DNA of 64,000 bases, from contig NC_059440.1 of NCBI RefSeq assembly GCF_021028975.2, positions 14,694,001 to 14,758,000 on the forward strand, given 5' to 3'. The notes beneath the pieces were generated by a model, which made no database searches, was not told the origin of the DNA, and saw nothing but the letters and a program-made list of their open reading frames with translations. Position numbers and translations under genes: made by a program. Positions 18,038 to 61,286 of this stretch are shown piece after piece. The stretch comes from Sphaerodactylus townsendi (taxonomy: Eukaryota). The number at the start of each line of letters is the position of its first letter. The first letter of the stretch is position 1.

Positions 18038-19970
18038 AACATCAAGACCAGCAACAAACAGTTCTTCAAGTACATCAAAAGCAGGAAGCCAGCTAGGGAA
18101 GCGGTAGGCCCGTTAGATGATGAAGGAACAAAAGGTGTGCTAAAAGATGACAGGGAGATTGCAGAGAAGCTGAATGAATTCTTTGCATCTGTCTTCACCC
18201 AAGAGGAGGTGAGGAAAATTCCTGCACCTGAACCAAGCTTCTTAGGAGGTGAATCCGAGGAACTAGCGAAGTTAGTGGTGGACAAGGAAGAAGTTCTGGC
18301 AGCCATTGATAAACAAAATGCTACCGAATCCCCTGGCCCAGATTGCATTCACCCAAGAGTTCTTAAAGAGCTCAAGCATGAAATTGCTGATGTTCTCACA
18401 TTAATATGCAACTTATCCCTGAAATCAGGCTCCATCCCTGAAGACTGGAAGATGGCCAATGTCACACCAATCTTTAAGAAAGGGTCTAGGGGGGACCCAG
18501 GAAATTACAGGCCAGTCAGTTTGACATCTGTTCCTGGTAAATTTGTAGAATCTATCATTAAAGATAAAATTATTAAACATGTAGAAAAGCAAGACCTGCT
18601 GAGGAAGAGTCAGCATGGCTTTTTCAGAGGCAAGTCCTGTCTTACAAACTTACTAGAGTTCTTTGAGGGTGTAAACAGGCATGTGGATAAAGGGGAACCA
18701 GTGGACATTGTCTACTTGGATTTCCAAAAGGCTTTTGACAAAGTTCCTCACCAGAGACTGTTGAGAAAACTCAGTAATGAAGGAATAAGAGGGGAAGTCC
18801 TCCTATGGATTAAAAACTGATTGAAGAACAGGAAACAAAGGGTGGGTATTAATGGGAAGTTCTCACAATGGAGAGATGTCGGGAGTGGTGTCCCCCAAGG
18901 ATCCGTTTTGGGACCAGTGCTCTTTAACTTATTCATAAATGACCTGGAAGTAGGGGTGGGTAGCATGGTGGCCAAGTTTGCAGATGATACCAAATTATGT
19001 AGGGTGGTGAGAACCACAAAGGATTGCGAAGAGCTCCAAGCGGACCTTGATAAATTAGGTGATTGGGCTAAGAAATGGCAAATGCAGTTCAATGTAGCAA
19101 AATGCAAAGTGATGCACATAGGGGCAAAAAATCCAAACTTCACATACATGCTACAAGGGTCAGTGCTATCAGTCACAGACCAGGAAAGGGATTTGGGCGT
19201 CTTAGTTGATAGATCCATGGGAATGTCAACTCAATGCATGGCAGCTGTGAAAAAGGCAAACTCTATGCTGGGGATAATTAGGAAAGGAGTTGATAATAAA
19301 ACTGCAAAGATTGTCATGCCCTTATATAAAGCAGTGGTGCGACCGCACTTGGAGTACTGTGTTCAGTTCTGATCGCCACATCTCAAAAAGGATATCGAAG
19401 AGATAGAAAAAGTGCACAGAAGGACAACGCGGATGATTGAAGGATTGGAGCACCTTCCTTATGAGGAGAGGCTGCAGCGTTTGGGACTCTTTAGTTTGGA
19501 GAGGAGACGGCTGAGGGGGGATATGATTGAAGTCTACAAAATTATGCATGGGGTAGAAAATGTTGACAGAGAGAAATTTTTCTCTCTTTCTCACAATACT
19601 AGAACCAGGGGGCATCCATTGAAAATGCTGGGGGGAAGAATTAGGACTAATAAAAGGAAACACTTCTTCACGCAATGTGTGATTGGTGTTTGGAATATGC
19701 TGCCACAGGAGGTGGTGATGGCCACTAACCTGGATAGCTTTAAAAAGGGCTTGGACAGATTTATGGAGAAGTTGATGTATGGCTACCAATCTTGATTCTC
19801 CCTGATCTCAGATTGCAAATGCCTTAGCAGACCAGGTGCTCAGGAGCAGCAGCAGGCCATGCTTTCACATCCTGCACATGAGCTTCCAAAGGCACCTGGT
19901 GGGCCACTGCGAGTAGCAGAGTGCTGGACTAGATGGACTCTGGTCTGATCCAGCAGGCTAGTTCTTATGT
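18038..19970 (+). mobile_element. CR1 LINE, 5'-truncated (RT domain of ORF2 plus 3'UTR), inactive
   Basis: ORFs 18137-19795 carry PGPD.IHPR, NYRPVSLTS, YLDFQKAFDKV, GVPQGSVLGP, KFADD and YEERL..LGLFSLE. Two in-frame TGA stops (18818-18820, 19370-19372). Ends in a GTTCTTATGT CR1 tail. Confidence 0.95.
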
Positions 19971-21753: not shown

Positions 21754-24700
21754 CTACTGGCATTTCACAAACTGCTTCAGACCTTCGAGGAATCGAATGT
21801 ATTCTTGGTGCTCCAGTGCTGTGCTGAGTTCCATCAGCTCATCCGCAAACGTGTTGTCCACTCCTCGGTCGGCCAAGAAATCCATCAAGTGGTCGTACAG
21901 GGCCTGGGGAGATAATTTTGAAAGGGGCGTTGTAAGAAGCATGTCCACTCATCACGTACCACAAATCAGGGACGATGGGCCTGAAGCTGACCCTGGTTTT
22001 CCAGTGCTCATACCACACGCATATGGTACATGTTTGCAATAAGGCTGCAACTTCTAGGTCAGTTAGCAGATCAAGTGATGCTAGTAATCAAGGGTGAATT
22101 GGAGAGCCCTTCATACAAGTCGGGCCTTGGCTCCACCAGAAAGGTTTCTGGGAATGGAAGAGACCATCTGACTCTCATAGAATACCACCTTCTTCCCCAT
22201 CATGTACTGCAGTGCCAAATGCCCCTCTGCAATACTGCTCCCAAGACACGGGGACCCCCAGGGACAACAGACCCTGCCTAACCCTTCTGGTTGCCTGGCT
22301 TGTATTTGCTCTTACCCAGTCGAGAGAGTCCGTGTTGAGTGTGTAATTATTTTCACGCCATTCTGAATCTCCTGCGGGCTGGAAGCTCACCTCCCGGATG
22401 GCAAAGATGTCGCTTTCCTCTTCCTCTCCGTGACCAATCTGAGCAAGAGGGCAACCAAACGTCAGCCGGAATGGAGAGGAGCGAGAAAGAAGGAACCCAA
22501 CAGAGCACACCACTACTACCCAACAGAGCACACCACTACGAAACTCTAAGGCAGGGGTCTGCAACCTGTGGCTCTCCAGATGTCCATGGACTACAATTCC
22601 CATCAGCCCCTGCCAGCATGGCCAATTGGCCATGTTGGCAGGGGCTGATGGGATTTGTAGTCCATGAACATCTGGAGAGCCACAGGTTGCAGACCCCTGC
22701 TTAAGGCAATCAGCAAGTGCTTTAAAAAGTTTGGTTAAGGCCCTCAAAAGGCCAATGCAGAGCAGTAGTGCTTGTATAACAGCTAGAGGACTTGGCCAAC
22801 CAGTGCTCAGTAAGTTCTCTCAAATATCAGGTTAGCTGAGAAACCAGGGTTATTACTGTAACCATTCTGGCCACAGCAAAGGGCATGCACAGCTGCGAAT
22901 TCTTCCATCTGGAAATACTTCCATGAATGCTCTGGGGACTAACATATCAGGGAGGAGGCTAGTCTAAAGCTAGTCTAGAACTCTGTTCCTTGCCAGGTTA
23001 AAGCTCATCAAAAGCCAGTCTAGAACTCTTTTCCTTGCCAGGTTAAAGCTCATCAAAAGCCAGTCTAGAACTCTTTTCCTTGCCAGGTTAAAGCTCATCA
23101 AAAGCCAGTCTAGAACTCTTTTCCTTGCCAGGTTAAAGCTCATCAAAAGCCAGTCTAGAACTCTTTTCCTTGCCAGGTTAAAGTTAGTCTAACGCTAATC
23201 TAGAACTCTTTTCCTTGCCAGGTTAAAGCAAGTCTAGAGCTCTCTTCCTTGCCTTAGCTTTCCACAAACTAGGGATTAGGGAGGAGAAAAAGCCACACAA
23301 AACAGAAGTGAATCTCTTGAAAAAAAGGTAAAAGAAACACTTGGAACCTTCCTGGGATGCATGGTGTTCATGCCCAGCAACATTTATGTGAAACGTAAGA
23401 AAGTCCTACGGGATGAAACCAGGGGTCCATCTAGTCCAGCATCCTGTCCCACACAGCAGTTCTGTTGGAGGCCCAACAGGATGTGATAAAGCCGAGGCCC
23501 TGATGCTGCCTCCTGACTCTGGTATTCAGAGGTGGACTGTCTCTGAATGGGGAGCTTCTCTTCAGCCACTGCGGCTAAATGCAATCGACAGACCCATCCT
23601 CCAGGAATCCTTCCAATCCCCTATACCTGCGGCCATCGTTACATCCTCCGACAGCCAACAGACCAAAATGCAATACCAACCTCATCCTCAGGATAATGGC
23701 AATCCAGCACAAGTGTCTGTTTCGTGTCATCCTTGGTCACTTCAATAACAAAATTCGGGGTTGAGGTCAGCTCGGGCTGTGGGGAGAGATGACAACAGGG
23801 GTAACATCACCAACCTGGCACTATAGCGAACGCAAGCATGGAGAGCAGGGCCCCCTATTACAACAGTATGGACACCCAATGAGCATCACCCAGAGAAAGG
23901 GCAGCACTTTTAGTTTCATGGGAGATTTTTGAACATCTGCTTTAAAAATAATCTTTTCCCGTGAATTCCAAAGGGATTTAAGACATGGGCATTGTAACTT
24001 CACCTTAGCCAGCATGGTGTAGTGGTTAAGAGCAGGTGCGCTCTAATCTGGAGAACCGGGTTTGATTCCCTGCTCTGCCACTTGAGCTGTGGAGGCTTAT
24101 CTGGTAAACCAGATTAGATTGTGCACTCCAACACCCCCCCCCCTCCATAACCAGAAGAAGCAGAATGATGCCAATAGCTGCAGACAGGCTTCTTCTATGG
24201 TATACATACAAACGATGGATTCTTTTGATTTTTTTTAAAGGTGTAGGATTCACACAGCCAGGCCGTTAACTCAGAAGAATTCCAGAGACAGTGATCAACA
24301 TTTAAAAGGTTGAATCGATCGAAGGGTAGCTTCCTCCACCTTACCTCTTGCTCATTGGGTTTCTGTTCTTCCTGTCCTTCCTCGTCAAAACTGGGTGGGA
24401 TGCTATTGTTAATGTTGAAGGAAATGCTGATCCTACGAGCAAAGAAGGCAACAATCTAGGATCAGCTCACAGAGACCGTGACATACCGATAGCCCTCTCC
24501 CTTACCAATCAAAAGCACTTTCAGAAGGAGAGTCTTGTCAGGGCGGTGTTTAAGGGATGCATCAGTCCCCAGTTAGAACTCCACGTCCCCCGGCCCCCCG
24601 AGGGAGGTACTTCACATGTAGTTGCTTCTAAATCTGTATTCCAATTTGTGACCCAAACAATATGGGTCCTCAACAAAATCAGTTCGGTATATTTCAGGAA

Positions 24701-27415
24701 CAACATCACAATTCCTGGATTCTCTGAAGACACAGTGAACTTTTAACTTTGCAGGCCCTCCCCACAAATCAAGCATGCGGGCACTTACGTTTCTCCTGCA
24801 ACTTTCCGAACCAGCTTGGCTTCTGTGCCCTGCACATCCAACTCCCACCCGCCAGACATTTTGGGCAAGGATTTGTTTTTCTGGATTTTCTTCTCTTCCT
24901 TAATCTCATCTGTCAGAAACGCCGCAAAAGCTTTGTCACCTGCGGGGAGGGGGATGACAGAGAAACCCAGCTAAGTTATGCTATGAATACCCGATATACC
25001 TTTCTCGACTAGTCTGAAAGGGCCTTGATTTCTATGACTTCTATAGTGTAGTCATCTTATTTGGCACTTTATTATGTTTCAATCCTCACTTTTTTGGCCA
25101 AAACCTGATTTCCAAAATGCCCCACGGGAATCAAAGTCTAATGACAAGTGAAGTTAAATGCAAAAGATTCCTTACTATCCAAGATGACTTCTTATCTCTA
25201 CCTCGCTACAACTGACAATCCCAAGGGTGTATCGGCAGGCAGCCCCCACCATAGGACAGCATTTGGCTTTAAACTTCCCAATATCTTATGACTCCTCCTC
25301 CTGGCCGAAGGTAGCTTGCTCCCAGTTGAAAAATATCTGGAGTAGAATAATTTAGATTTGTACCCCACTTTTCTCTTCTGTAAGGAGACACAAGGTGGCT
25401 TACAAGTGCCTTTCCCTTCCTCTCCCCACAACAGACACCTTGTGAGGTAGGTGGGTCTAAGAGAGTTCTGAGAGAACTGTGACTAGCCCAAGGTCACCCA
25501 GCAGGAATGTGGAAACACACCTGTTTCACCAGATAAGCCTTCACCACTCATGTCACTCATATGGAGGAGTGGGGAATCAAACCCGGTTCTCCAGATTAGA
25601 ATTCACCTGCTCTTAACCACTGCATCACACTGGGGTGGAGCCTTAGGGGGGAGAAATTCAGGGAGGACTTTCAATGGAGTATAATGCGACACAGTCCACC
25701 TGCTAAAGCTGCCATTTTCTCCAGGTGACTGTCATTAGGAGACCAGTTGTAATAGCAGGAGATCTCCAGTCCCTCCTAGAGACTGGCAGCGCTCTTGGCC
25801 ACCATTTTGTGACTGGCCTCCAGCTCCCACAGTAGCCATTTTGTGGTGTCACAAATTCTTAAATTGTACCATAAAGTGCTTCAAGATGGAAACAAGGAGA
25901 AGCAGTTGATAAACAATCACAAAACTGTCTATCAACCCAGCAGCTTTGCACACACTGGGCAAAATACCAGAAAGTTGAAGCAGGCTGACCTCAGAACAAC
26001 ACTGGCAGCAAGGGGAGGTTACAATAGTGGTTAGAGTGGGTTTGTTATAGATAATGACATATAGTTAAGCTTTGATTCGTACATGTTTGATCTTGTTCGA
26101 TGTGTTTTCCTTATTGTATATTTCCCTCATAGAAGAAGAGAAGGACTTATGTTTAGCTTCCTACTTATACATTATTATCATTTCTTTTTATGTATTTTAT
26201 GCTTGAAACTAATAAAAAAATTTTTTAAACAACACCGGCTGCATAGTTATCTTATGTATTTGGAGAAACAGACTTCATTTAAAAAAAAGAATGCTAAAGT
26301 TGCAGAGTGCGTGCCTTGAGGACATATTACATGCAATCCTTTTTATGATCTGCATTTTAAGGAATACACCCCTCCAAGCTCCCTTCTCATATCTGAAAAG
26401 CAAGATATAAACACTTTAAGAAATTTCAATATTTCCTACTTCCTCTTCTCCCCTTCCCTTTTAAATGTATTTTCCCCAAACTATAAACTCCCAGCACTTG
26501 AACCCTCCTCAGAGAAAATGCCCCCTTTGCAGTCCCCCTATTATCCACCCTTTAGCCAGCTACACTAGGAAACTGGCAAACCATAGATTTTAAGACCTAC
26601 CTCACCCCAACATAGAAAGGTAATTGTGGGGTCACACTCTCTCCCAGCATCCTGCTCCCCAAAGTAGCCACCCAGATGCCCTTGAAAATCCTACAAGTCT
26701 AATGGCATCAGGAAACTGTGTTCACCAGCCCACTGCTTCTACATCCCGGGTTCCCCTTGGGACCCTGATTGAACTCTCCTTTTATCCCAAACCCAAATCC
26801 TCTTAGAAGCTCTCTCTTTCCCACTCAGGATCTAAGCACCAGCTCCAAGGCTTTAATAATTTTGGTCTCTTTTGTTGAGCCCAAGAAGCTCTTCTCATTC
26901 GTATTACACCCCTCCTAGTACAGTCTTCTCAGCATACTATTCTTACAACAGCCTTTCCAGGCAGGTCAAGCTAACAACAGCCTTTCAAGGTAGGTCGGGC
27001 TAACTGAGCCAGGATTCGAACACGGGTCTCCCCGCACTTAGCCTAAACGCCACCCACAGACCCTGCCAGCTCGCACCAAGTCGTCTTCTCGGAAGACAGC
27101 CCTACTAGAAGCCAATGGGCTTCCTCGCGAGCAGGACCTCCCCGGTTCCCCGAGGCGCGGCCCGGGCGCGCCGGCTGCGCGCTCACCCTCGGTGTGGAGC
27201 CCCCCGCAGGTGCAGGCCAGCGAGGGCGAGGTGTGGGGAGGGCGCAGGAGGCCGTCGCGGCTGGGCAGCCAGAGGGAGCGGGTGAAGGGCCGGGCGGCGG
27301 CGGCGGCAGGCGCAAGGGCGGCGGGCAGGCAAGGCGCGCCCAGGCGCAGCGGCGCGTGGAGAGGCCGGAGCGCCAAAGCGGCCGCAGCCGGGCGGAGGAC
27401 GCGGGCCAGCAGCAT
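21754..27415 (-). CDS. C1QBP: Complement C1q binding protein (p32, mitochondrial MAM33 family), 6 coding exons, 278 aa
   Basis: Exons 27415-27187, 24939-24789, 24432-24345, 23776-23681, 22438-22316, 21903-21754. All introns GT-AG, phases consistent, total 837 nt. Ala/Arg-rich presequence ending ...LHTEGDKAF, plus PELTSTPNFV, YTLNTDSLDW and ALYDHLMDFLADRGVDNTFADEL motifs. Confidence 0.97.
22552..22699. mobile_element. Palindromic hAT MITE in C1QBP intron 4
   Basis: TIR CAGGGGTCTGCAACC, near-perfect hairpin. Confidence 0.85.
22960..23255. repeat. 45-bp minisatellite (about 6 copies) in C1QBP intron 4
   Basis: Unit agtctagaactcttttccttgccaggttaaagctcatcaaaagcc starts at 22972, 23017, 23062, 23107 and 23152, followed by degenerate copies. 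Confidence 0.95.
23390..23612 (-). mobile_element. Older CR1 3'UTR fragment
   Basis: gtccatctagtccagcatcctg motif, diverged relative to the CR1 3'UTR above. Confidence 0.6.
25350..25633 (-). mobile_element. Squam3-type SINE
   Basis: Full length. A partial + copy also lies at about 24007-24133. Confidence 0.85.
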
Positions 27416-28272: not shown

Positions 28273-29343
28273 ACGCAGCAAGCTGCAGCTAGCATGTGCG
28301 TAAAAGCAGCCGCTCTTTTGGGGTATTGCATGCAGGGAAACGTAGTCTTGTGACAGCAACAAAGCTTGGGAGCCTGTCGGGTTTCCTGCATTGGTTCTTT
28401 GCCTTTTCCTTCCGGGGCTTGTCTTGGCGGGAAGGTTTTTATTCTGGTCCTTTGTTGCGAGAGTGTCAAGCTGGTAGCGTGGGAAGGAAATCGAAGTATT
28501 TCCAAGGCTCTTATCATGCACCCAGGAAGGACTTTGCACCTTCCAGGCGTTTCTGGCTGGTAAGTCACGCAGATCTATTTTGGGATGCATGTTGGAGTTT
28601 GCATAAAGTTGTAACGTACGAACGGGCAGGTCTCTAATCCCTGCCTGGGGCCAGGAATAGTAAAAAAAAGTTGGTATGTTTCTCCACCCCCCTCCCTTCC
28701 ACTGGAGCAAATGTTTATTGAAATCTTGCAAGAGCAAACGTCATCCTTCCCTGAGCCAAGGAAAAGAGCAAAAACCCTTTTCCTCCCGGTGGGAGATGCA
28801 ACTAAATATTTAGTCTGCGTGCAACTCAGACTCATGTGTTGCGTCAATTGCTGCCTTCACCTTTTCCCTGCCTGTGTTTTCCTCCAGTCTTTGCAGCCTT
28901 TGAATGCGGCTGAAATATCCAGCATGTCGAAGGAGGAATCCTAAAAAGCCCAGATACTCGCAAGCAGCCAGAGGATCTAAAATGGGAAAGATCAGGAGCT
29001 AAATGCTTGGAGAAAGCATTTCTAGAACAATAGGCTTTGGAGGTAGGTAGAACTGGGGATTCTGTGTAAAAGGTTTTGCTTCTGTGTTAAAGGTTTTTCT
29101 TCTGGAAACGACTCAGAGTATGTCACCCAAATACAGAAAATTCAAATGTTACATTGTAAGGAAAGGGTGTGCGATTCCCCTCCTCCAGATTTTGCACAAA
29201 AAAAAAACCCACCCCATCAGCATGGGGAGTGCAATACATTTTTGATGTAGTGATGAAAATAAAGCAGAAACTCTCCCTTGCCTTCTGCTCTGTGAAACTT
29301 GCCGAGGTAATCACCTTGTCACTAGCAAAGTGCCCATAGTAAT

Positions 29344-29616
29344 GTATTGTCTCAGGCTTTCATGGCCGGATTCAACTGGTTGTTGTGGGTTTTCCGGGCT
29401 GTGTGGCCATGGTCTGGTAGATCTTGTTCCTAATGTTTTGCCTGCACCTGTGGCTGGCAACTTTTGAGGTATATCATAGAGGGAAGTCTATCACGGTGTG
29501 TAACAGACTTTCCTCTGTGCTACACCTCTGAAGATGCCAGCCACAGATGCAGGCAAAACGTTAGGATCAAGATCTACCAGACCACTGCCACACAGCCCAG
29601 AAAACCCACAACAACC
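29344..29616. mobile_element. Penelope-like element terminal fragment forming a palindrome, with 13-bp TSD
   Basis: Flanked by TGCCCATAGTAAT at 29331-29343 and 29617-29629. Arms ggttgttgtgggttttccgggctgtgtgg... and ...ccacacagcccagaaaacccacaacaacc. Confidence 0.8.
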
Positions 29617-29748
29617 TGCCCATAGTAATTTTCTAGAATGTCAGATTCATACCTAAGATGGTACAGAACGGGAGACCAGGTTCCCAGCTTATGTTTTCTT
29701 TTCACTTGAATTTTTGTGTAGATAGCTGTGAAACGTTGGCAAAGTAGG

Positions 29749-30012
29749 ATGGTGTCGTCAGCTTGTAACCGATGCATGAAGATGAAAGCAAACTTTTGAA
29801 GCCAGAGTGAAGATTTTGCATTCACTGGTAAGGGAGGTAAACCTTTGTTTCTTATCCGTAATTTGTCACCGAATCATTATGAAGCCAGTAAACTGAAATA
29901 CCACTATAAAACAAATCACAAAAACGTTTTGTTTGATTGTCTACCTAAATCAGAGTTGTGGGAAAATAAGCTGACGACGTTGAAATCATCCCTAAATAGC
30001 CAGCGGATACTG
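29749..30012 (+). pseudogene. hAT (Charlie/GTF2IRD2-like) transposase N-terminal remnant
   Basis: Degenerate translation FAFTGKGGKPLFLI..HYEASKLKYHYKTNHK...KSEL.ENKLTTLKSSLNSQ resembles the BED-type zinc finger region of Charlie-group hAT transposases. Confidence 0.65.
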
Positions 30013-30402
30013 ACTTTTCCCACGCAAAGCTTTAAAAACATTTGTAGAACGTTTTGAAAATGTTTTGAAAAGATGGTTTTCCTGGATTAGTCTGCAATGT
30101 GCCTTTTAAAATGTTCTGCAGATGTTTTAGCTCATCAAAATAAACGTTTCAGCTTGTCCGCATGGAAAATGTTCCCTCTTCTTCTTTTTTTTAATTGCAC
30201 GTGCGTGGATTCGATGCGACGAAGACTGGAATCTTTGAAGCCGAGCCGATTTTTCTGTGATCTGATCTGATTTTCCTTAGATTCTATTGGTCAGCACAGC
30301 AGAGGCGCCTTTTCACCTCAACTTCCTGTTTCCTTCCCAGGCGCCGTTTTAGCTGTGGATCTCTGCTTCGATTTGAGCCCGGACCTTGACGGCGCATTCG
30401 CA

Positions 30403-33400
30403 ATGGAGCTGGAAGATTTGGCCGTGTTGCTGTCGCTGCAGATATTGCTTCTCTTGCAGGAGAGGGTGCATCTGTGTCTCAGGTTCTACCGCAGGATGCA
30501 GGCCCGGCGAGCAGAACTTTTTCACCAAGCGATCCACCCTCAGAGGCCGGGTATTCGGGCAACCAGTAGGGCAAGGAGAGCCCTTCTTGCTAGCACCGAC
30601 CGCCGTTCATCTCAGAGGGCCAGGCATGGTTGGTTCGCCCTGGCGTGCACCCCCAACCCTCCTCGCTTCTGGGTGTACCCCAGGAGTCGTGACTGGTGGG
30701 AGAATTGTGTGATGGCTTTTTGGGGCGACGAGGAGTGGCTCCACAGCTTCAGAATGACCCGGCAGACCTTCATGGAACTTGTGGAAACTTTGCGGGGACG
30801 CCTGCACCGAGCGACCACCACCATGCGGCAGGCCATACCCGTGGAGAAGCGGGTGGGCGTGGCCCTGTGGTATTTGGCCAGCCCAAATACGTACCGGGAG
30901 GTTCGTGAACAGTTTGGGGTCGGACTGTCCACGGTGGCCGAAATGGTGGTGGAGGTTTGCCTGGCGATAGAGACGGAGCTCTTCAACAAAACGATCTGTC
31001 TCGGTCCTGATGTGGCAACGGTATGTGGGCTCTCACGTGTGTGGAGCTTTTTGTCTGTTCTGCTGTTTGTCTCTGTAGTGGCACAGAAGAGCAGCGGCGG
31101 CGGCGTAGTGGTTAAGAGCAGGTGCACTCTAATCTGAAGAACCGGGTTTGATTCCCCGCTCTGCCACTTGAGCTGTGGAGGCTGATCTGGTGAACCAAAT
31201 CAGCTTGTGCACTCCAACACACGCCAGCTGGGTGACCTTGGGCTGGTCACAGCTCTTCTGAGCTCTCTCAGCCCCACCTACCTCACAGGGTGTTTGTTAT
31301 GGGGGGGAGGAAGGGAAAGGAGATTGTCAGCCCCTTTGAGTCTCCTTACAGGAGAGAAAAGAGGGATATAGATCTAAGCCAGGGGTAGGGAACCTGCGGC
31401 TCTCCAGATGTTCAGGAACTACAATTCCCATCAGCCCCTACCATCAGCCCCAATTGGCCATGCTGACAGAGGCTGATGGGAATTGTAGTTCCTGAGCATC
31501 TGGAGAGCCGCAGGTTCCCTACCCCTGATCTAAGCTCTTCTTTCTTTTTCTTCTAGTAAATAATGCCTTCCCAATTTAATTTTATTTATGATTGCAGCAT
31601 TAGAACGGTGTTTCCTTTAATCTTTGTGCTCTAAGAATTATGCTGTATGTGACCATAATGTATTTCAGAACAGTGCACTTTAAGCTATTTGTAATGTGAT
31701 GCTAGTTGTCATAGCATGTCCATAAGAAGTGACTCCTCGCATTAGAGTTTATTTCCCATCGTATCATGTCTCAGTGTTTCTCCGTGTTCAAGACCCTTTT
31801 TGAAGTGATTCTCAGTTTCCTTGTGCTACGGAACAATGATATCTGTGACTTATCTTCTCCCTGGTCGGTTCCAATGTTTCCTGCAGATGTTGGACTTTGA
31901 TCTGTGACTGCAAGGACAGTGTGCTCAAATGTGATGCTCAAATTGCAACGATGGCATTTGCATTTGTTTATGTCACATCGATTCTTAAACATCTGCACTG
32001 ACTGCCAGTCGAGTTCTGGGCCCATCTTCAAAGTTTTGGTATTGACCTTCAAGGCCATATATGTGATTTTGGACCTGCATATCTTCGTGACTGCCTCTCT
32101 CCATGTTGCCCTTCAAGGCCCCTCCGCTCATCGGAGGGGAACCTTTTGTCAATCCCTGGCCCGAGAGACATCCAGCTGGCTTCGACACAAGCCAGGGATT
32201 TTTCGGCCTTGGCTCTGACCAGGTGGGACAAATTACCAGCCGAGGTTAGGGCCCTGCGGAAATTATCTCCGTTCCCCAGTGCTTGCAAAACCAGGTTGTT
32301 GCACCAGACCTTTCCCAACTAGCCAGTTCGTACCAACAGCTCCTCTCGGCCTCCGAAACCAGGGGGGGGAGTGGGGATGAGACAGTCTGATTTTTAAAAT
32401 GCCATCTATTTTATACATTATTTCGTAATATATTGTTTTAAGAAGAAGAAGAACAGTTGGATTTATATCCCCCTTTCTCTCCTACAGGAGACTCAAAGGG
32501 GCTTACAAACTCCTTTCCCTTCCCCACCTCACAACAAACACCCTGTGAGGTAGGTGGGGCTGAGAGAGCTCAGAAGAACTGTGACTAGCCCAAGGTCACC
32601 CAGCTGACGTATGTGGGAGTGCACAGGCTAACCTGAATTCCCCAGATAAGCCTCCACAGCTCAAGTGGCAGAGTGGGGAATCAAACCTAGTTCCTCCAGA
32701 TTAGACTGCACCTGCTCTTAACCACTATGCCATTGCTGCTCTCAATATGTTATAGGGTTTTTGCAATTTTAATGGTTGTTTGTAAATATTTTATAATGTC
32801 TAATTGTTGTCACCCGCCCTGAGCCTTTCCGGATAGGGTGGGATGAAAATGTGAAATAATAACAACAACTTTCCCCCTGAATCCACAGGTGATGGCCGGC
32901 TTCAGCCAGTTAGGTTTCCCACACTGTGTCGGAGCCCTGGATGGTTCTCGCCTGCCAATCAGGCATCCTGGGGGGAGGTCAGCTAACTATGCCAACCAAA
33001 AATGTTTCTCTTCCATCCTCCTGTTGGCCACCGTCGACCACACCGGACGCTTCATTGACGCAGAGATCAGTCACTCTGGAAAGAATCACGACGCACTCGT
33101 CTTTGTCAATTCCAACCTGTGCAAAGCAATGGATAAGGGGTTGTATGTTCCGGGCAACCCGACTCTAATCCTCGAAGGGGTCAGTGTGCCACCCCTAATT
33201 TTGACTGACGGGGCCTTCCCAATGCGGAGGTGGCTCATGAAGCCGTACGCACCACCGCACAACGCGCAGGAGATGCGGTTCAATTATCAGCTGAGTCGGG
33301 TCCGGAATGTGGTGGAGTGCGCTTTGAAGAGACTGAAGGCGAGGTGGCGTTGCCTCACCGCCAAACTGACCGTCTTCCCCCAAAACGTGACTTCACTAGT

Positions 33401-33629
33401 AGCAGCCTGTGTGGTGCTCCATAACATCTGTGAGGCAAAGGGCCATGAGGTGCCCCAGACTGCCACGGAGTCCGGACCGATGGTGTCACAGCTGACCAAC
33501 TCAGACACCGCAGTAGAGAGAATTGACAGTCCCGAAGGGTACGATCCTTGCGATGACTTGAATCTCAGTGAAGGGGAAGCCGTCCGGGATGTGCTTGCAC
33601 GATTCATTACAAGCGGGAGTGCGAGATGA
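30403..33629 (+). CDS. PIF/Harbinger-family DDE transposase (HARBI1/ALP1-like), two exons 30403-31020 and 32889-33629, 452 aa
   Basis: Exon 1 has FRMTRQTFMELV...IPVEKRVGVALWYLA...FGVGLSTV (HTH region). A phase-0 gtatgt...ccacag intron follows. Exon 2 has GFPHCVGALDG, GKNHDA, LILTDGAFP, RNVVEC..RLKARWRCL and ACVVLHNIC. No stops or frameshifts after splicing. Confidence 0.88.
31089..31550 (+). mobile_element. Squam3-type SINE (tail split by a MITE)
   Basis: Full length, inside the Harbinger intron. Confidence 0.9.
31380..31527. mobile_element. Palindromic hAT MITE inserted in a SINE tail within the Harbinger intron
   Basis: TIR CAGGGGTAGGGAACC with a perfect 8-bp TSD ATCTAAGC. Confidence 0.9.
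31995..32320 (+). mobile_element. L2-type LINE 3' fragment in the Harbinger intron
   Basis: FKVLVLTFKAI... motif typical of the L2 ORF2 C-terminus. Confidence 0.55.
32441..32742 (-). mobile_element. Squam3-type SINE
   Basis: Full length, inside the Harbinger intron. Confidence 0.9.
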
Positions 33630-34389
33630 CGGTGGGGGGGCTTGAACTAGTAATGTTCAACGTTGGTCTGAGATTTCACAGTTTACAGATTGGATGTGGC
33701 ACTGTTGGTTATTTCCAATGATCTGCAGCACACTTCTGCTGTTCAAAGGTGTGCTGTGGAGTTTTCCCTGTTTGTGTGTGTGCAGTCGTTACACGGTTAT
33801 ATTTTTTCAATCAGAAATTTTAAACGCTTTTTTTTTGCACAAAACTGTGTTTTCTGGTAACAGGATGCCACGCTTTCTAGTGTGCTCCGCCAAACATCAC
33901 TCTTCACGCATATGTGGGTGAGGGAAATTGCTGTGGAAAGTGTGGTTAAAAATATGGAGCTTCAACTCCACACAGACACGTTTCCTTTGAAGTCGATTCC
34001 GTGGACTTCAAAATTGTTCCCAGTAAAGTGCACAGAACTGGTGCCACCAGCTTCAGACGTGGGGCAGGAGCGTAGGTCCACTACGTGCCCCCTTTCTATG
34101 GGGGACGCAGAGGGCTGGCTGGCAGAGTGGAGCAATTAGGAACACAGATGAGTCTCAGCATAATTTCTCCATCTTCTGTAATCACCCTTAAGAACTCCTG
34201 CTTCACTGAAAATCCTTTTGCTGGGATCAGGGGCTGGAGGGGAGATGTTACTTGCCCAAAGCCTCAACTGTCAATGGCCACCATCTTAAAGTCCTCACTC
34301 ATCCTCAGAAAAGGTACCATTGGCATCTAGAGGTACTAGGTTGAGGACCATTTCTTGGGAGACAACTGCACCACCATGGGTGAGACAGA

Positions 34390-36629: not shown

Positions 36630-37283
36630 TTAGTTCTTGGCTGCTCTGAGCTTCCGGCGGAAGTACTCGGGTGCGGCGTCAAACAGCCAATCGGCATCCA
36701 CCACACAGAGGTCCCGCATGTAGCACTTGTTGGTATGAAGGAGTTCGTTGAACACGACGCAGGCTGGCTTGCAGTGGAAGAGGACGGAGGACGGGTGGAT
36801 GGCCACCGGCTGGTGGGTGTCGGTTGTGGCGTAGGTCCCGTCCAGCTGCAGCTCGGCTGTGTACATGAAGAGGCTGTACGCGAGGCAGCGGCGGATGTTG
36901 CCCGTATCAGACCGGGAAGATTCGAGCGGTATCGAGAGCTGTAGTAGGAAGGCAGGATAACAGACAATTATGGGAATGATGTTTTCCAGATGCATGATCA
37001 GACTCCTCCCTTGGGGCTGTATAATTTTCTTTCGTTACATGTGCAAAAAAATACAACACCATATGTGGTGTAGTGGTTAAGAGCAGGTCTGGAGAACTGG
37101 GTTTGATTCCCCACTCTTACAGTCCTGCTGGATGATCCTGGGCTAGTCGCAGTTCTCTCCAAACTCTCCCAGCCCTTCCAACCTCACAAGGTGTCTGTTG
37201 TGGGGATAGGAAGGGAAAGGAGATTTTTACAGGAGAAAAAGGCAGGGTATAAATCCAAACTCTTCTCCTTCACAACTCAATTA

Positions 37284-40300: not shown

Positions 40301-43300
40301 TGCTGTCATTGTTCTTTATTTTGTTCAAGTGCTGGGTACCCAGCCAGTGTCCCAAACCCCTCTACCCTCTGCCACTTCTTGTGCACCAGCAAATGAAAGC
40401 AGAACCCAACTAAACAGCACGGCCTTCTAATTCAACAGAATACTAAAACCAGGGGGCATACATTGAAAATGCTGGGGGGAAGAATTGGGACCAATAAAAG
40501 GAAACATTTCTTCACGCAACGTGTGATTGGTCTTTGGAATATGCTGCCACAGGAGGTGGTGATGGCCACTCACCTAGATGGCTTTACAAGGGGCTTGGAC
40601 AGATTGATGGAGGAGAAGTTGATCTATGGCTGCCAATCTTGATCTTCCTTGATGTGAGATTGCAAATGCCTTAGCAGACCAGGTGCTCGGGAGCAGCAGC
40701 AGCAGCAGCAGCAGGCCATTGCTTTCACATCCTGCATGTGAGCTCCCAAAGGCATCTGGTGGGCCACTGCAAGTAGCAGAGTGCTGGACTAGATGGACTC
40801 TGGCCCGATCCAGCAGGCCCTTATGATCTTAAGATAAAAAGTGAACGCTTAAACCCTTGACAGCTTTGCTTCCGTTCACATTTTTTGGACACTGATGAGC
40901 AAGACAGCAAAAGTGATACGGGAAAGTCTAATCTTTTCCCCTTAAGCGAAAAAGGAAAGAAAGGTTATCTCTGTTAAATTTTTACTTTGGAGAACTTAGG
41001 TTCCAGAGGAAATGCTGCCATCTTCCTTCCCAGAGTGGTCAGGACGAGCTGGTCATCTTTTCTTTCCACTGCCCCCAACAGGGCAAGCTGTTCAATAGCC
41101 GCCTGAATGGCCTCTGTTGAGCAAAAAGACACGCGGTAAGGATCCTGCTACTATCGTTTCCCGAAAGGAAGAGTGACAGGCGTCCGAGATGTCTAATTCA
41201 ACAGCAACCTTTATTAGGCATAAAAATCCACTCTAGTGGCTTGACAAATGTTTAAAAGTTACATGGCAAGTTTGTAATCAGAAGAAAAGGAGGAACAGAA
41301 CTAAGCATAAAACTAGTTACAAAATTCAATCACTTGTAAGAGAAATTTTGATACTTTTCCCAACATCACGACATCTGAACTGTTTAACAAGAGCTCCACA
41401 GTAAAACTGTCGGTGTCTCTTGCAGTTTCATCTACAGCCAGACAGTGAGAGAAATTTCTAATATTCACATAGCTCAGATAGTCGAGTATAATATGCTTAA
41501 GAGTGTCCACTTGCTGGTTCTTACAATGGGGACAAACCTGATCCTGGAGAGGGAAGGATAAATAGTGACACTCTGTCACAGCAGATGGTAGAGTATTGCA
41601 TCTATCCCTTGTAGTAATCTATCTCTATTGGGGTTCAGTCAACAATGCAAGATATTGAGCTGATTGCTAGGAAGATAGGTTTACCAAAGAGAGTTGGTGT
41701 TTTTAAAATGAGTATTGTCACTAGCCTCCTTGTCTATTTTTCACACTGAAAGTACAGCGTATCAGTACTTCAACTAAAATGTTAAAAAACCCTCATGGTA
41801 CATGCTTGGAAATTTTCGCAAAGTGATGCCCTTATCTGGGCTGGAATTTCTAGTGGCAGTGAGTCCTGTCTCCTGACCCCATGCTGTAGGAACTTGCTTA
41901 CCTGGAGATGGTTTGGACATAAAGTCAAAGGTGAGAACGTTCGGAATCCTCAGGGCCAGCAGGTGGAGCATCACACTGGCCAGGTTACACCTGCAGAGGG
42001 AGAGAAATCCTGCCTTTTGATTCAGGAAAGAAATCTTGTTTTGTCATACAAACCTGGCCGACTGGTGATACCTTGGTAGCAGAAACAGATACTGCCCAAG
42101 GCGAATCAAACAGGAAGTCCCAAAATAAGTTTTTCTGTTATAGCCCTCAGTTACAGAACTCTGCCTCCACTAAGAGGTGCCACTGGCAACGTTCTTAAAG
42201 ACTTCTGGCAGAGCCTGTTCCAGAAGACCTTTGAAATTAATGTAGCACAAATGGCTAGGCAGCTTTTTTGGCCAAGGGCCCCCCCCCCCCCCCCCCAAGT
42301 TTTTTTACTTGTGGAGACAATGGGTTGCATTAACATTCTGCATTAACATTCTGCATTGCATTAACATATTCTGCATTCTGCATTGCATTAACATATTAAC
42401 AATGGGTTGCAACATTCTGGTCTGTGCTCGATGGGGACCAAGAACAGGCTGGTCAAAAGGCAGGAACCAAACCAAGAATCCAAGCCTCACCTTTGTATTT
42501 CAGGCACCGTCATTTTGTCAAACTTCTCAAACTCGTGTTCCGTGTACAGGCGGTAGCAAAGTCCGCTGTCCTCTCTTCCGGCTCGGCCTGCCCGCTGCCA
42601 AGCCTGTGCTTTTGATACCCTCTGGACTGCCAGCACTTCAAGCCCGCTTTCTACGAAAGAACAGGAATCCACCATCCACAACACCTGTAAAAAGTCTTCC
42701 CTTTGGGAAGATAACTTCCGAAGGGAGGGCAGATCAACAGCCACTGCACAGCTGAGATGATCTCTTTCCTTCTGACCAGACTGTGGAGATCTGGGGACCT
42801 TCCACAGACTAACCATTAAATTGCTACCAGATGGATCTATACCCTGGCCCAACATTATGTGGGCAAGAAAACGTGATTTACCTGGTATGCAAAGGACTAG
42901 GAGATACAAGAATTAGTGTGGACTGAAAGAGAGAGCTCACAGTTAAGCGGAAGCCCTTAAACGATGCCCCACACTTACTGCTCAAAGCATCTGCCCCAAC
43001 CAAACTTTTGTGTAAGGCATTGCCCTTCGTGCACGTACCAGGAGTGTACTTCTTGGCTTTAAACATGCCCGTGTCCACGACGTATTTTATGCCTGCGATA
43101 GTGATGGAGGTCTCAGCAATGTTCGTTGAGAGGATCACTTTGCGATAGCCCTGAGAATACAGAAGGGGTGTGTGTGGAAATGAAGAAGCTTCATCTAAAT
43201 TTCTTCGTGGCTGTGTTGGGCTTCTCCTTAGAGTATGTTCAAAGCACAGACCTCTGGAAACTCCCTTCTTAGGGAGATTCATCCCTCTGTCTGTTGCTAT

Positions 43301-46300
43301 CTTTCTGCCAGTTGTTTCATATGGCATTCCTTCGATGGTCCCTCCTTCCTAACCAATGTTTTGTATGCTATTTTAGCTCTTTCAAACACTCTTTTAAAAA
43401 CACTAGAATCAAGACAATGGTTAGTGAACACTACCCAGACACAGGATGTCTCTCTGCAGGAAGCTCTGCAGGAAGCTCTGCAGGAAGCAATTAAGTGGAT
43501 TAAAATGCCAGGCAACTGATACGCAGATACCCTCACTAACTGATTATGCAACTTCAGTGTTAAATATCTGCTAAAATGGGTGGCTTCCACTTAACACATG
43601 CAAATCACACTTGCAAACTGCACCCTTAACATTTGTTAACCAATGCAAATGGTTCTTTCTCCCACCCTAAGAACATAAGAACAAGCCAGCTGGATCATAC
43701 CAGAGTCCATCCAGTCCAGCTCTCTGCTACTCACAGTGGCCTACCAGGTGCCTTTGGGAGCTCACATGCAGGATGTGAAAGCAATGGCCTTCTGTGGCTG
43801 TTGCTCCCGATCACCTGGTCTGTTAAGGCATTTGCAATCTCAGATCAAAGAGGATCAAGATTGGTAGCCAACTCTGGACATTCTACAGGTATATATACTC
43901 CACTTGCTTTCCTACCATCAGATCCTCTGAAGATGCTAGCCACAGATGCAGGCGAAACGTTAGGAAAAAAAATACTATAGCCATACAACCCATAAAAATC
44001 CACAACACCCCACTCTTTTAAAAGTTGTTTTAAAGAGGTACGCTGGGAGTGGGGAGAGTTATTTTAATGGTTTTATAATGTATTTTATCATTTGTATTTT
44101 GAACTGTTAGCCACGCTGGTTGCTCTTGTAATGGGAGAAAGGCAGGTATGGTTTTTTAAAACAAACAAACTGTAGTTATAAGCAATGAAATAGGTCAGCA
44201 AGTTTGATATGCATATCAAAAAGCAGAAATTCCTTTCCTTTTTTAAAAGAAAGAAGTGCTTGTGCGTGTGTGTTGTCGTGAGTAGGTAGTGCTCCTAGCG
44301 ATTCATTAAGTAAACCAAGCAAAAGTAACTTTACATATCTGAACACCTAAGAGTGGACTTGCTACATATCTCATTCCCCCACCCCACACCTGGGGCTTGC
44401 AGCCTGGAGCCCGTGTTAGCCAACCGAGTGCATCAGGACCCACCCAAGAAACATTCCTCTGTTTTGTTTACATTGATTCCATTATTTAAAATGTCTGGAT
44501 GGAAGACGTAGAGAGGAGGACTGGAATTAGACCCTGTTCTCACCCACCAAGTGGTCTCCGTCCCTCACTGTAGCCCTTGGATGCCTCTGTTCAGAAAGTT
44601 ACAGAGAAAAGTGTTGCACCACAGAGCCAATTGCATGTTCTACCTTGGGTGCAGTCTGGAAGACTCGGAGTTGCTGTGAGTAGGGCAGAGAAGCATACAG
44701 AGGCATGACCACCATTGGTGCGCAACCGTCGGGAAGATGTTTTGCGATGTCCCGGCAGGTTTTGGTCATGGCTTCGATCTCCTCCTGACCCGTCAGGAAG
44801 ACCAAGATGTCCTGAGAAGATGGTGCTTCCTTGAAAGGAAAGAACAGATAGAAGTATAGATATTAATCTGTATTGTTAACAGTTCACCACCGGACTACAG
44901 AAATCTGAGATGGTTAAGCTTAAGGGTTTAGTTAATCGGCAGTCCTATGCAGTTACAGCGGCCTTGAGACCCACTGATTTAAATGGGCTTCCACCAGAGT
45001 AATTCTGCACTGGATTGCTATGGAAGCTACCTTGATTTGATCTGATTTACTGGATGTAATATACCGCCCCACCCATCCCAGGATCAGGATGGCTCACTAC
45101 AAAACATCTGAGAGCTCTGGAAGTAAATAATAATATTTATTCTATTTATTAATTTACAAAATTGGTCCCCTATCTTTCTACGCTTACAGTGGCCCCCAAC
45201 AAGTGCAAAGACATGAGGGGAAAAAGGGGAAATCAGAAAACAACCCCCCTCTCCCCCACACACACATACACACAGTCTCTAAAAGAAACCAACAAGACAT
45301 GAGAATGGTTATGGACAAGAGGTCTCGAATCCTAGATTTTCTCCCTGCAACATACAGACTGGGATGTGGGATGGAATAGCGGAGTCACATATCATCAGAT
45401 CTCAGAAGCTAAGCCAGGTTGGTCTTTGGACGGAGGACCATGAAGGAAGACTGCAGAGGAAGGCAACAGCAAACCATCTCTGCTTAATCACTTGCCTTGA
45501 ACACGGCTACGGGGTTGCTGTAAGCCAGCTGCGAATTGACAGCACTTTACACGCAAAACATACAGATCAAGAGACAAGTGAGGACGACTAAGGGAGAAAT
45601 CCTAATCAGATCTACTCAGAATAATCCCTGTGTTATTTAGTAGAGCTTACTCCCAAGAAAGCGTTCTTAGGTTTACAGCCCTAACAAGTTCCTAGAAAAA
45701 TGCAGCTGGGGTCTTCAGTACACATGGCTGGGCAAAATGCAACTTTCAACCTGCAGATTTGGTTGTTTTTGGATCTGGAGAGGTTCTCACGTCCTTTACA
45801 TCTCACTGAATGAGGCTCACCTGTTTCTAAATACAGACCGGACTGTCAATATACCCACAGATATAATAAAGTTGGCGCGTACCTGATGGATCTGAAAGAT
45901 GGTCACTAACGCAGCCTGGAGGTAATCGCTCTGAGGTTGTTTGGCGTAGAAGATCTGGATGGGATGCTGCCGGCCTTCCAGGTATAGGACAGGTGCTCCA
46001 TTGAAGTATTGGGAGAACTGGTCAACGTCCATGGTAGCCGACATAACAATTATCTGTCAAAAACGACCCCTTGTTATTGTGCTTTAACAGAAGTCTGGGG
46101 ACGCTTGTCTTATGCTTAGTTCGCCCTTTGATCTAAGGAAGTATTACCAACTCTGACCAGTAAATCAAAACAAATCAAGGTAGCTTATGTAACAGCAATC
46201 CAGTACAGAGTTACTCTGGTGGAAGCCCTTTGAAATCGGTGGGCCTCAAGGCTGCTGAAACTGCATAGGACTGTACTGCTGATTAACTGAACCCTTAAGC

Positions 46301-60515: not shown

Positions 60516-61286
60516 GTGTATATCAAGCAAAGGAAGGCCAGGTGCGAGGTCAGGTGTATGTGAACTGATTTACTGCGTTTTTATTTAGTAATTTTGTACT
60601 AATTTTCAAAGTACAATTAACACCCATAGAAAAAACATACGAAACAAAAAGAATTCGAAACAGATAGAAACAGAGCAAAAAAGAATACAGGACGTCTACC
60701 CAAAACTCCATTAATATAATCATAACAAGGTGGATCTCAATGGAATATTCTGATATTATCAGAGAAACCATAACACAATCTTTAATTTCTTCTCTTCTGT
60801 CTACCACCTCTTTACTGGTCAGTCTCTTATCCACTCTAATGGGAACCCACTTCCACCAGAGAATCCCCTAACCAAGAATCCACCCCCCACCCAGAATCCA
60901 TCCCAAGAAAATCCCTCCACCTCCCTGTACTGCATGGTGACTACCTATTAGAGTATCTAATCTAATGGCAGCCGCTTGGGGAATCCACCATATTGGTGGA
61001 TGGAAGGGAGCGGGGATTGAATGGCAAGCAGGAAGAGTTTGAAACCCGGGTTAAAGAAAAAAGTCGCTAATAGAATAGAATAGTCGGGCAAATAGAATGA
61101 GTTAGAAGCATTAAGGGGGGCAAGTTCTGTAGGAACTCCCTCCCCACAAAAAAAGCTTTTAAAAAGGGCCTCAACCCGCTCAATTTTGCCCATGCAGAAT
61201 CAGCCAAAGTTGTACACTGTCTCAGACTTTTTTGTGTGTTCCAGTTTGCAGATTTTTTACACGGCGTCTTCCCTTTCCTCATCAAG

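What the first reader, a model, noticed from the sequence alone, without database searches (positions are those of the whole stretch)
30403..33629. Intact, spliced Harbinger transposase that looks immobilised: candidate lineage-specific domesticated gene
Seen: the two exons splice into an uninterrupted 452-aa ORF retaining the DDE triad positions (GALDG, LTDG, VVEC). Its 1.87-kb intron has accumulated two SINEs, a hAT MITE and an L2 fragment, implying long residence, while the neighbouring hAT transposase is riddled with frameshifts. I can recognise no clean TIR pair and no Myb/SANT partner ORF. CCAAT-like (about 30286) and ETS-like (acttcctgt, about 30321) motifs lie just upstream, and the gene is divergent from C1QBP. 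Known: Harbinger elements need a Myb/SANT protein, and HARBI1 and ALP1 are domesticated Harbinger transposases. Inference: an independent domestication. Caveat: several normally conserved residues are altered (DGTH>DGSR, NRKG>NQKC, AFG>ALK), which fits either neofunctionalisation or early neutral decay.
Basis: partly seen in the sequence, partly recalled or inferred. Interest (0 to 1): 0.78.

Follow-up and report, generated by a model that had tools for sequence, protein, structure and literature searches.

The report
KRAB-less copy of gecko Harbinger gene
This is a real, expressed, single-copy gecko gene built from a Harbinger "jumping gene" enzyme, but it is probably a lineage-specific duplicate of an already tamed KRAB-Harbinger fusion gene that lost its KRAB part, so it adds a member to a known class and is not a fresh domestication.

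Summary
Exons 30403-31020 and 32889-33629 encode the 452-aa RefSeq protein XP_048374905.1 ("putative nuclease HARBI1", Sphaerodactylus townsendi). It has a full DDE_Tnp_4 domain and an intact D224/D313/E349 triad.

An RNA contig confirms the 31020|32889 junction. It also shows three non-coding 5' exons (28424-28559, 28888-29042, 29722-29827) spliced to an acceptor at 30340/30341. The "CCAAT/ETS promoter" motifs therefore lie in an intron. The transcript starts about 1 kb from the C1QBP start codon, head to head.

The gene is single-copy, with no TIRs and no Myb partner. No orthologue appears in four other annotated geckos, but a species about 2% diverged has it.

Its sister (72% identity, support 100/97) is a KRAB-fused paralogue in the same genome. 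The two share the acceptor, an in-frame stretch before the ATG, and loss of the ancestral start codon. The family is the known squamate KRAB-Harbinger ("KHARBID") class (Cosby et al.).

The ORF is intact although the intron SINEs are 6.5-7% diverged, and 62 of 65 conserved positions are kept. Both argue for past selection. H227R, F352L and G353K, plus coding divergence equal to the flanks, allow recent relaxation.

The scan noted two other Harbinger-derived genes elsewhere in this genome. Verdict: new member of a known kind.

The parts
28424..28559 (+). 5' non-coding exon A. This is the 5' end of the assembled transcript, about 1 kb from the C1QBP start codon at 27415 on the minus strand.
   Evidence: RNA contig record 8 of run X3. 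Donor G|gtaagt. Stop in every relevant frame.
28888..29042 (+). 5' non-coding exon B.
   Evidence: record 8. AG/GT boundaries. In-frame stops and 4 upstream ATGs.
29722..29827 (+). 5' non-coding exon C. It carries an in-frame stop 9 codons before its 3' end.
30339..30340 (+). AG of the used splice acceptor, preceded by the polypyrimidine tract ttcctgtttccttccc.
30341..30402 (+). 5'UTR part of exon D. It is in frame with the CDS and homologous to residues 53-73 of the KRAB paralogue P0260. It contains TTG 30373-30375 at the position of the ancestral Met. It shows 6 differences in 62 nt against the related species.
   Evidence: tblastn, alignment, differences.
30403..31020 (+). Coding exon 1 (residues 1-206): N-terminal helices and the helix-turn-helix-like region of the Harbinger transposase.
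31021..32888 (+). Intron of 1868 nt, GT..AG. It holds SINE copies at 31093-31377 and 32457-32740 (inverted), a palindromic MITE at 31380-31527, and another repeat at about 31846-32239.
   Evidence: RNA depth is 7 in the intron against 160 in the exons.
32889..33629 (+). Coding exon 2 (residues 207-452 plus stop), the DDE_Tnp_4 domain. D224 = 32940-32942, R227 = 32949-32951, D313 = 33207-33209, E349 = 33315-33317, L352/K353 = 33324-33329.
33630..34200 (+). 3'UTR. The RNA contig runs on for 672 nt beyond 34200.
   Evidence: record 8.

Best explanation
The locus is a five-exon, single-copy, expressed host gene of Sphaerodactylus whose whole coding sequence is a Harbinger (PIF/Harbinger, DDE_Tnp_4) transposase.

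Origin (inferred). It most likely arose by DNA-level duplication, since the intron was retained, of a KRAB-Harbinger fusion gene of the squamate 'KHARBID' type. The copy landed between C1QBP and DHX33 without the KRAB exon. It is now transcribed from a start about 1 kb from the C1QBP start codon. Three non-coding exons are spliced onto the old fusion acceptor, and translation starts at an internal ATG (30403).

Function (inferred). The protein keeps the N-terminal DNA-binding-type helices, the DDE fold and the conserved C-terminal motif. It carries unique changes next to catalytic residues (H227R, F352L, G353K). I read it as a sequence-specific DNA-binding protein without a repressor domain, probably not an efficient nuclease. 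It was kept by selection for most of its history and is possibly under relaxed constraint now.

Shown: gene structure, expression, copy number, phylogenetic position, residue pattern. Inferred: the duplication-with-KRAB-loss origin, selection, and the DNA-binding function.
For: - Exact identity to RefSeq XP_048374905.1.
- A spliced RNA contig of 3061 nt joins 28424-28558 / 28887-29040 / 29720-29826 / 30340-31019 / 32888-34200+ at GT-AG sites. Exon depth is 160.6, intron depth 7.4.
- The 5' exons are non-coding.
- DNA runs of the same species cover the exons at about the depth of the single-copy flanks, whereas SINE bins run to millions.
- The sister is P0260, a KRAB protein of the same species: 72% identity, support 100/97. 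End branches are 0.21 and 0.19. Both lie in a Sphaerodactylus-only clade (94/96), weakly sister (87/66) to the gecko-wide KRAB fusion clade.
- Homology to P0260 continues in frame upstream of the ATG to the acceptor. Both have Leu where P0263, P0271 and P0270 have the ancestral Met.
- No KRAB exon is detectable anywhere in the window.
- KRAB-Harbinger fusions are catalogued in squamates. My hits P0290 and P0125 carry the gene numbers given there for KHARBID1 and KHARBID3.
- Constraint, first line: 62 of 65 columns conserved at 90% or more are kept. Window-branch changes run at 0.057 per column in conserved columns against about 0.22 in variable ones.
- Constraint, second line: the intron SINEs are 6.5% and 7.0% from their consensus. 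At that neutral distance P(no new stop) is 0.058, and about 12 indels would be expected in the CDS.
- The AlphaFold model has mean pLDDT 86. Its nearest solved folds are all DDE transposases or integrases, though only weakly.
Against: - Against a species about 2% diverged, the contigs that carry the exons differ as much as the non-coding flanks (2.1-2.4% against 1.8%). Of the five listed CDS differences, 3 are non-synonymous and 2 synonymous. That does not look like strong purifying selection.
- H227R, F352L and G353K hit near-invariant positions.
- The 5'UTR has 9 upstream ATGs.
- Support for the link to the gecko-wide KRAB clade is weak (87/66).
- KRAB loss versus independent use of a transposon-borne acceptor rests on about 20 codons of alignment.
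Confidence: 0.6

Rival explanations
1. A transcribed, still-intact relic on its way to becoming a pseudogene. A duplicate that lost its KRAB domain lost its function too, and is read through only because it sits next to the C1QBP promoter region.
For: Coding divergence from the related species is no lower than in the flanks, and listed changes are 3 non-synonymous to 2 synonymous. There are unique changes at near-invariant residues. The window branch has 7 changes in highly conserved columns against 3 on the P0260 branch. The 5'UTR has 9 upstream ATGs. An N195S polymorphism is present within the species.
Against: The ORF is intact over a neutral distance of at least 6.5%: P about 0.06 from stops alone, far lower once indels are counted. 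Substitutions avoid conserved columns about fourfold. The end branch is no longer than that of the KRAB paralogue. Splicing is clean and exon depth is 20 times intron depth.
Confidence: 0.17
2. A free Harbinger transposon inserted here and was domesticated on the spot, independently of the KRAB-fused genes. The shared acceptor would then be a feature of the transposon itself.
For: There is no KRAB exon in the window. The DDE triad is intact, as in transposon-like copies. The family was recently mobile in another gecko, where near-identical dispersed Eublepharis copies occur. A low-copy repeat lies just upstream of the acceptor at 30073-30269.
Against: The nearest relative is a KRAB fusion. The ancestral Met is lost in both proteins, and the in-frame pre-ATG homology is shared. 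There are no TIRs, no target-site duplication and no Myb ORF remnant. KRAB occurs in both halves of the Sphaerodactylus clade and in its weakly supported sister clade.
Confidence: 0.15
3. An orthologue of vertebrate HARBI1, as the RefSeq name suggests.
For: Only the automatic name 'putative nuclease HARBI1' and the shared DDE_Tnp_4 domain.
Against: All close relatives are squamate-specific. The best match outside its own species is about 50-54% identical. A fish protein named HARBI1 is 29% identical and sits on a very long branch. No orthologue appears in four other annotated geckos.
Confidence: 0.02
4. A live autonomous Harbinger transposon.
For: Intact ORF and DDE triad.
Against: Single copy. 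No TIRs. No Myb-like partner. The intron is filled with old SINEs. The mRNA starts in three upstream exons outside any element.
Confidence: 0.01

Closest known systems
KHARBID1-4 and HARBID-G2: KRAB- or SCAN-Harbinger host-transposase fusion genes of squamates and archosaurs (Cosby et al., bioRxiv 10.1101/2020.05.07.082677, Table S3)
   Same: The same transposase superfamily and the same squamate radiation. The gene numbers listed for KHARBID1 (Anolis 103280956) and KHARBID3 (Python 103055168) are my hits P0290 and P0125. Upstream host exons are spliced onto an acceptor just before the transposase ORF. The sister gene carries KRAB.
   Different: This gene has no KRAB, SCAN or other host coding domain, and its upstream exons are non-coding. 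It keeps all three catalytic residues, whereas several conserved fusions have lost one. It is confined to Sphaerodactylus as far as the data show. No dN/dS was obtained, whereas KHARBID1 is listed at 0.08.
P0260, 'protein ALP1-like' of Sphaerodactylus townsendi (517 aa, KRAB + DDE_Tnp_4)
   Same: 72% identical over the whole transposase part. Sister on the tree at 100/97, with equal branch lengths. Shares the acceptor-proximal in-frame segment and the Met-to-Leu loss.
   Different: P0260 has a 42-residue KRAB box at residues 12-53 and keeps H, F and G at the three positions changed in the window protein. It lies on another chromosome-sized record: 179.7 Mb against 33.7 Mb.
HARBI1 (with its partner NAIF1), the vertebrate-wide domesticated Harbinger transposase
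   Same: A stand-alone domesticated Harbinger transposase with a DDE_Tnp_4 domain and no TIRs. The Myb-like partner, if any, is encoded elsewhere.
   Different: Not orthologous. HARBI1 is ancient and conserved across vertebrates, while this gene is lineage-specific. Any partnership with a Myb-like protein is untested.

Membership tests
PIF/Harbinger transposase (protein family) | DDE_Tnp_4 catalytic domain | tested here: met
   Pfam PF13359, profile positions 1-158 of 158, E 4.7e-27 for exon 2 and 1.7e-26 for P0113.
PIF/Harbinger transposase (protein family) | Catalytic D-D-E triad | tested here: met
   D224, D313 and E349 align with the family's catalytic columns. Neighbouring H227, F352 and G353 are changed.
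Autonomous Harbinger transposon | Terminal inverted repeats with a 3-bp target-site duplication | tested here: not met
   No flanking inverted repeat beyond chance. The best is 24 nt at 75%.
Autonomous Harbinger transposon | Second ORF for a Myb/SANT-like DNA-binding protein | tested here: not met
   No Pfam Myb hit in ORFs of 27.7-30.3 kb and 33.6-37 kb. Fused paralogues match only the two exons by tblastn. Short or decayed remnants could be missed.
Autonomous Harbinger transposon | Multiple near-identical copies in the genome | tested here: not met
   Genomic contigs of the same species cover the exons at about 1-1.5 times the single-copy flank depth.
KRAB-Harbinger host-transposase fusion (KHARBID type) | KRAB domain in the same reading frame | tested here: not met
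   No KRAB in P0113. No KRAB exon in 64 kb by tblastn at E up to 50. The upstream exons carry stops.
KRAB-Harbinger host-transposase fusion (KHARBID type) | Descent from the fused lineage | tested here: inconclusive
   Sister to a KRAB fusion at 100/97. The link to the gecko-wide KRAB clade has only 87/66 support. The shared acceptor, pre-ATG homology and Met loss favour descent.
Domesticated transposase gene (general criteria) | Transcribed and spliced as a host gene | tested here: met
   Five-exon RNA contig with GT-AG junctions.
Domesticated transposase gene (general criteria) | Orthologues at the same locus in other species | tested here: inconclusive
   Present with its flanks in one species about 2% diverged. 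No orthologue among the proteins of Eublepharis, Gekko, Paroedura or Heteronotia. The intervals themselves could not be read.
Domesticated transposase gene (general criteria) | Purifying selection (dN/dS below 1) | tested here: inconclusive
   Indirect support from ORF survival and site pattern. The short-range comparison shows no deficit of coding changes. A codon model could not be run without paralogue or orthologue CDS.
HARBI1 orthologue | Orthology to vertebrate HARBI1 | tested here: not met
   Nearest relatives are squamate-specific. 29% identity to a fish protein named HARBI1, which sits on a long branch.

The most novel reading that the evidence does not exclude
A host-transposase fusion run backwards. 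A KRAB-Harbinger repressor gene spawned a KRAB-less copy, which selection kept under a new promoter next to C1QBP. That copy recognises the same Harbinger-derived DNA sites, or pairs with its KRAB-bearing sister, and so acts as a natural antagonist of that repressor. Alternatively, because its DDE triad is intact, it still cuts DNA and supplies transposase in trans.
Probability: 0.15. Interest if true: 0.6.

Novelty: new member of a known kind. Interest (0 to 1): 0.35.

Why it matters
Domesticated Harbinger transposases and KRAB-transposase fusions are established sources of new vertebrate regulators. This locus shows a later step that is seldom documented. A fused gene is duplicated, sheds its host domain, acquires non-coding 5' exons beside a housekeeping promoter, and survives as a stand-alone transposase-like gene.

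Together with its KRAB-bearing sister it gives a natural pair for asking what the KRAB domain adds. The Sphaerodactylus-specific clade of five paralogues, all with intact DDE triads, is a compact system for studying the turnover of such genes.

The gene model itself is already in RefSeq under a misleading name.

Tried and rejected
I therefore obtained no DNA for the KRAB paralogue, no intron comparison, and no view of the C1QBP-DHX33 interval in other geckos.
Exon searches went by reference. Whole-protein work used database protein P0113, which is identical to both exon translations.
- The PDB sequence search gave only chance hits. Foldseek against PDB gave only weak matches at E 3e-3 or worse, all to DDE transposases or integrases.
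- Pfam finds no named HTH domain in exon 1.
- The KRAB exon search at very lax thresholds gave only noise.
- Pfam scans of flanking ORFs found no Myb, hAT or other transposon domain between C1QBP and DHX33.
- Read laying listed only part of the differences from the related species, with 166 not shown. Whether the 3 extra letters in that species' exon-2 contig are one in-frame codon is unknown.
- HARBI1 orthology and the active-transposon reading were considered and rejected.
- Complex prediction was not used, because a heterodimer claim is speculative here.
Full report
**What is in the sequence**

The window comes from the gecko Sphaerodactylus townsendi. The ATG at 30403 opens 206 codons that end at a donor (acg|gtatgt, 31020/31021). 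An acceptor (ccacag|gtg, 32888/32889) opens 246 more codons that end at the stop at 33627-33629.

Each exon was searched by reference. A full-library HMMER search with exon 2 returned a 452-aa protein, P0113, that is 100% identical over its residues 207-452. tblastn of P0113 on the window gives 100% identity over exon 1 as well. P0113 is RefSeq XP_048374905.1, "putative nuclease HARBI1 [Sphaerodactylus townsendi]".

Exon 2 matches Pfam DDE_Tnp_4 over the whole profile (E 4.7e-27). D224, D313 and E349 sit in the family's catalytic columns.

The 1868-nt intron contains two inverted copies of a SINE (31093-31377 and 32457-32740), a palindromic MITE (31380-31527) and another repeat.

**Neighbourhood**

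- C1QBP lies on the minus strand, with its last exon near 21757-21948, exon 2 at 24788-24970 and its Met at 27415 in a 74% GC island.
- DHX33 is on the minus strand downstream, with an OB_NTP_bind exon at 36633-37034 and Helicase_C at 42878-43324.
- MIS12 is at 61236-61904.

**Expression and true gene structure**

Of the runs that hold exon 2, one (X3) is clearly RNA. A single 3061-nt contig lies on 28424-28558, 28887-29040, 29720-29826, 30340-31019 and 32888-34200, and runs on 672 nt further. Its depth is 160.6, while the intron carries only a 7.4-deep contig.

After shifting by the one or two ambiguous letters, every junction is GT-AG. The exons are 28424-28559, 28888-29042, 29722-29827, 30341-31020 and 32889 onward. 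The 31020|32889 junction is thus confirmed.

The gene also has three further 5' exons. They are non-coding: the reading frame that enters the ATG meets a stop 9 codons before the end of exon C, and the exons carry 9 upstream ATGs. The ATG has a good context (gcaATGg).

The ETS-like string is part of its polypyrimidine tract. The assembled transcript begins about 1 kb from the C1QBP start codon.

**Copy number and mobility**

Genomic contigs of the same species (X1, X4) cover the exons at about the depth of the unique flanks, while SINE and MITE bins reach millions. No inverted repeat flanks the gene beyond chance. No Myb-like ORF or remnant was found. The copy is immobilised and single.

**Relatives**

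A word-index search with P0113 found no protein above 72% identity other than itself.

- The best hit, P0260 (517 aa, same species, another chromosome-sized record), is 71-72% identical and carries a KRAB box at residues 12-53.
- Hits in Gekko, Heteronotia, Paroedura and Eublepharis are only 44-54% identical.
- Many squamate relatives are KRAB or SCAN-KRAB fusions.

In a careful IQ-TREE run on 36 proteins:

- The window protein and P0260 are sisters (100/97), with end branches of 0.21 and 0.19.
- They sit in a Sphaerodactylus-only clade of five (94/96) that holds a second KRAB fusion.
- That clade is weakly (87/66) sister to a KRAB fusion conserved across geckos (the quick tree of 62 rows, agrees on the first two points).
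- The same gecko clade holds short-branched orthologue groups, which look like old domesticated genes. It also holds a swarm of near-identical dispersed Eublepharis copies, which look like a recently mobile element.

**Literature**

Cosby et al. (bioRxiv 10.1101/2020.05.07.082677) catalogue host-transposase fusions. Their Table S3 lists KHARBID1 (Toxicofera, KRAB + PIF/Harbinger, dN/dS 0.08), KHARBID2 and KHARBID3 (Python), KHARBID4 and HARBID-G2. The gene numbers given for KHARBID1 and KHARBID3 are those of my hits P0290 and P0125. The family is therefore a known class.

Two earlier notes of this scan describe other Harbinger-derived genes in this genome. My own searches show such paralogues exist, but I did not test those notes' specific claims.

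**Origin**

Homology between the window and P0260 does not stop at the ATG. P0260 residues 53-73 align in frame with 30340-30402, right up to the acceptor. Where the KRAB-less relatives P0263 and P0271 start with Met (and P0270 has an internal Met), both the window (TTG 30373-30375) and P0260 have Leu. The window's own ATG aligns with a Val of P0260.

A shared loss of the ancestral start fits a common ancestor that was entered from an upstream coding exon, that is, a KRAB fusion. No KRAB exon is detectable anywhere in the 64 kb.

I therefore favour a duplicate that kept the intron, lost the KRAB exon, and picked up non-coding exons near the C1QBP promoter region. A separate insertion of a transposon that carried its own acceptor is not excluded.

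**Selection**

Evidence for constraint:

- The window protein keeps 62 of 65 columns that are at least 90% conserved in the family, which is typical of its relatives.
- After polarising differences from P0260 with the sister clade, window-branch changes run at 0.057 per column in highly conserved columns. In variable columns the rate is about 0.22 once unresolved sites are shared out.
- The two intron SINEs are 6.5% and 7.0% from a consensus of 14 copies in the window.
- Simulating 6.5% neutral change on the two exons leaves the ORF free of stops in only 5.8% of trials. The indel density of those SINE copies predicts about 12 indels in the CDS.
- The 0.21 changes per site on the end branch need more neutral time than 6.5%, so the SINEs entered after the split from P0260.

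Evidence against constraint:

- A related species (X5, about 1.8% diverged in unique non-coding pieces) differs by 18 letters in 30268-30980 and 20 in 32815-33660.
- After setting aside the 6 letters that fall in the 62-nt pre-ATG segment, that is 2.1% overall, no lower than the flanks.
- The five listed CDS changes are 2 synonymous and 3 non-synonymous (F40L, A43V, R68L).
- N195S is polymorphic within the species.
- H227R, F352L and G353K are unique to the window protein at near-invariant positions beside catalytic residues.

My reading is long-term maintenance, with catalysis probably no longer the selected property and recent relaxation possible.

**Structure**

An AlphaFold2 model built on 47 relatives has mean pLDDT 86. 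It shows long N-terminal helices, a helical bundle at about residues 98-213, and an alpha/beta core from residue 219. Foldseek finds only weak matches (best E 3e-3), all to DDE transposases and integrases such as ISCth4, Mos1, piggyBac, Tn5 and retroviral integrases. This is consistent with an RNase-H-like core that has no close solved relative.

**Verdict**

Domestication and lineage specificity are plausible and partly supported. "Independent domestication" and the promoter reading are not supported. The gene is a new, KRAB-less member of the known squamate Harbinger-derived and KRAB-Harbinger gene class, already annotated in RefSeq under a misleading HARBI1 name.

Noticed in passing
window 29378-29616: Near-perfect palindromic MITE with 117-nt arms, 87% complementary and 5 nt apart. 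Read depth is in the millions, so it is among the most abundant repeats of this genome. It lies in the intron between 5' exons B and C.
   Followed up: partly
window 30341-30402: The 62-nt pre-ATG segment of exon D, formerly coding in the KRAB paralogue, shows 6 differences from the related species (about 10%), against about 2% elsewhere. It is CpG-rich and now untranslated.
   Followed up: no
window 30073-30269: Low-copy repeat, about 6 times single-copy depth at 90% likeness or more, just upstream of the acceptor. It contains 'aaaatgtt'-type motifs. It could be a transposon end or an unrelated MITE.
   Followed up: no
window 22973-23189: Tandem repeat of a 45-nt unit, about 4.8 copies, open in both strands as a repeated 15-residue peptide. 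It lies inside the C1QBP gene region.
   Followed up: no
window 18137-18817: ORF with a reverse-transcriptase domain (RVT_1, E 4e-13), a LINE fragment downstream of C1QBP.
   Followed up: no
window 61236-61904: Single-exon MIS12 ORF (Pfam Mis12, E 1.7e-41). The C1QBP-DHX33-MIS12 order matches my recollection of the human gene order, which I did not test.
   Followed up: no
proteins P0002, P0004, P0007, P0010, P0269, P0273 (Eublepharis macularius): Near-identical Harbinger transposase proteins, with branches of 0.002-0.02, on different chromosome-sized records. This suggests a recently mobile Harbinger family in the leopard gecko.
   Followed up: partly
protein P0266 (Paroedura picta, 433 aa): A conserved Harbinger-derived protein, orthologue of Sphaerodactylus P0264, is named 'endonuclease 8-like 2 isoform X1' by its source. 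This is probably a naming or gene-merging error.
   Followed up: no
window 30813 and 30986: Variants within the species among the runs laid: 30813 G>A (synonymous) and 30986 A>G (N195S). The latter is also seen in the RNA run and in the related species, so the reference allele may be the derived one.
   Followed up: no
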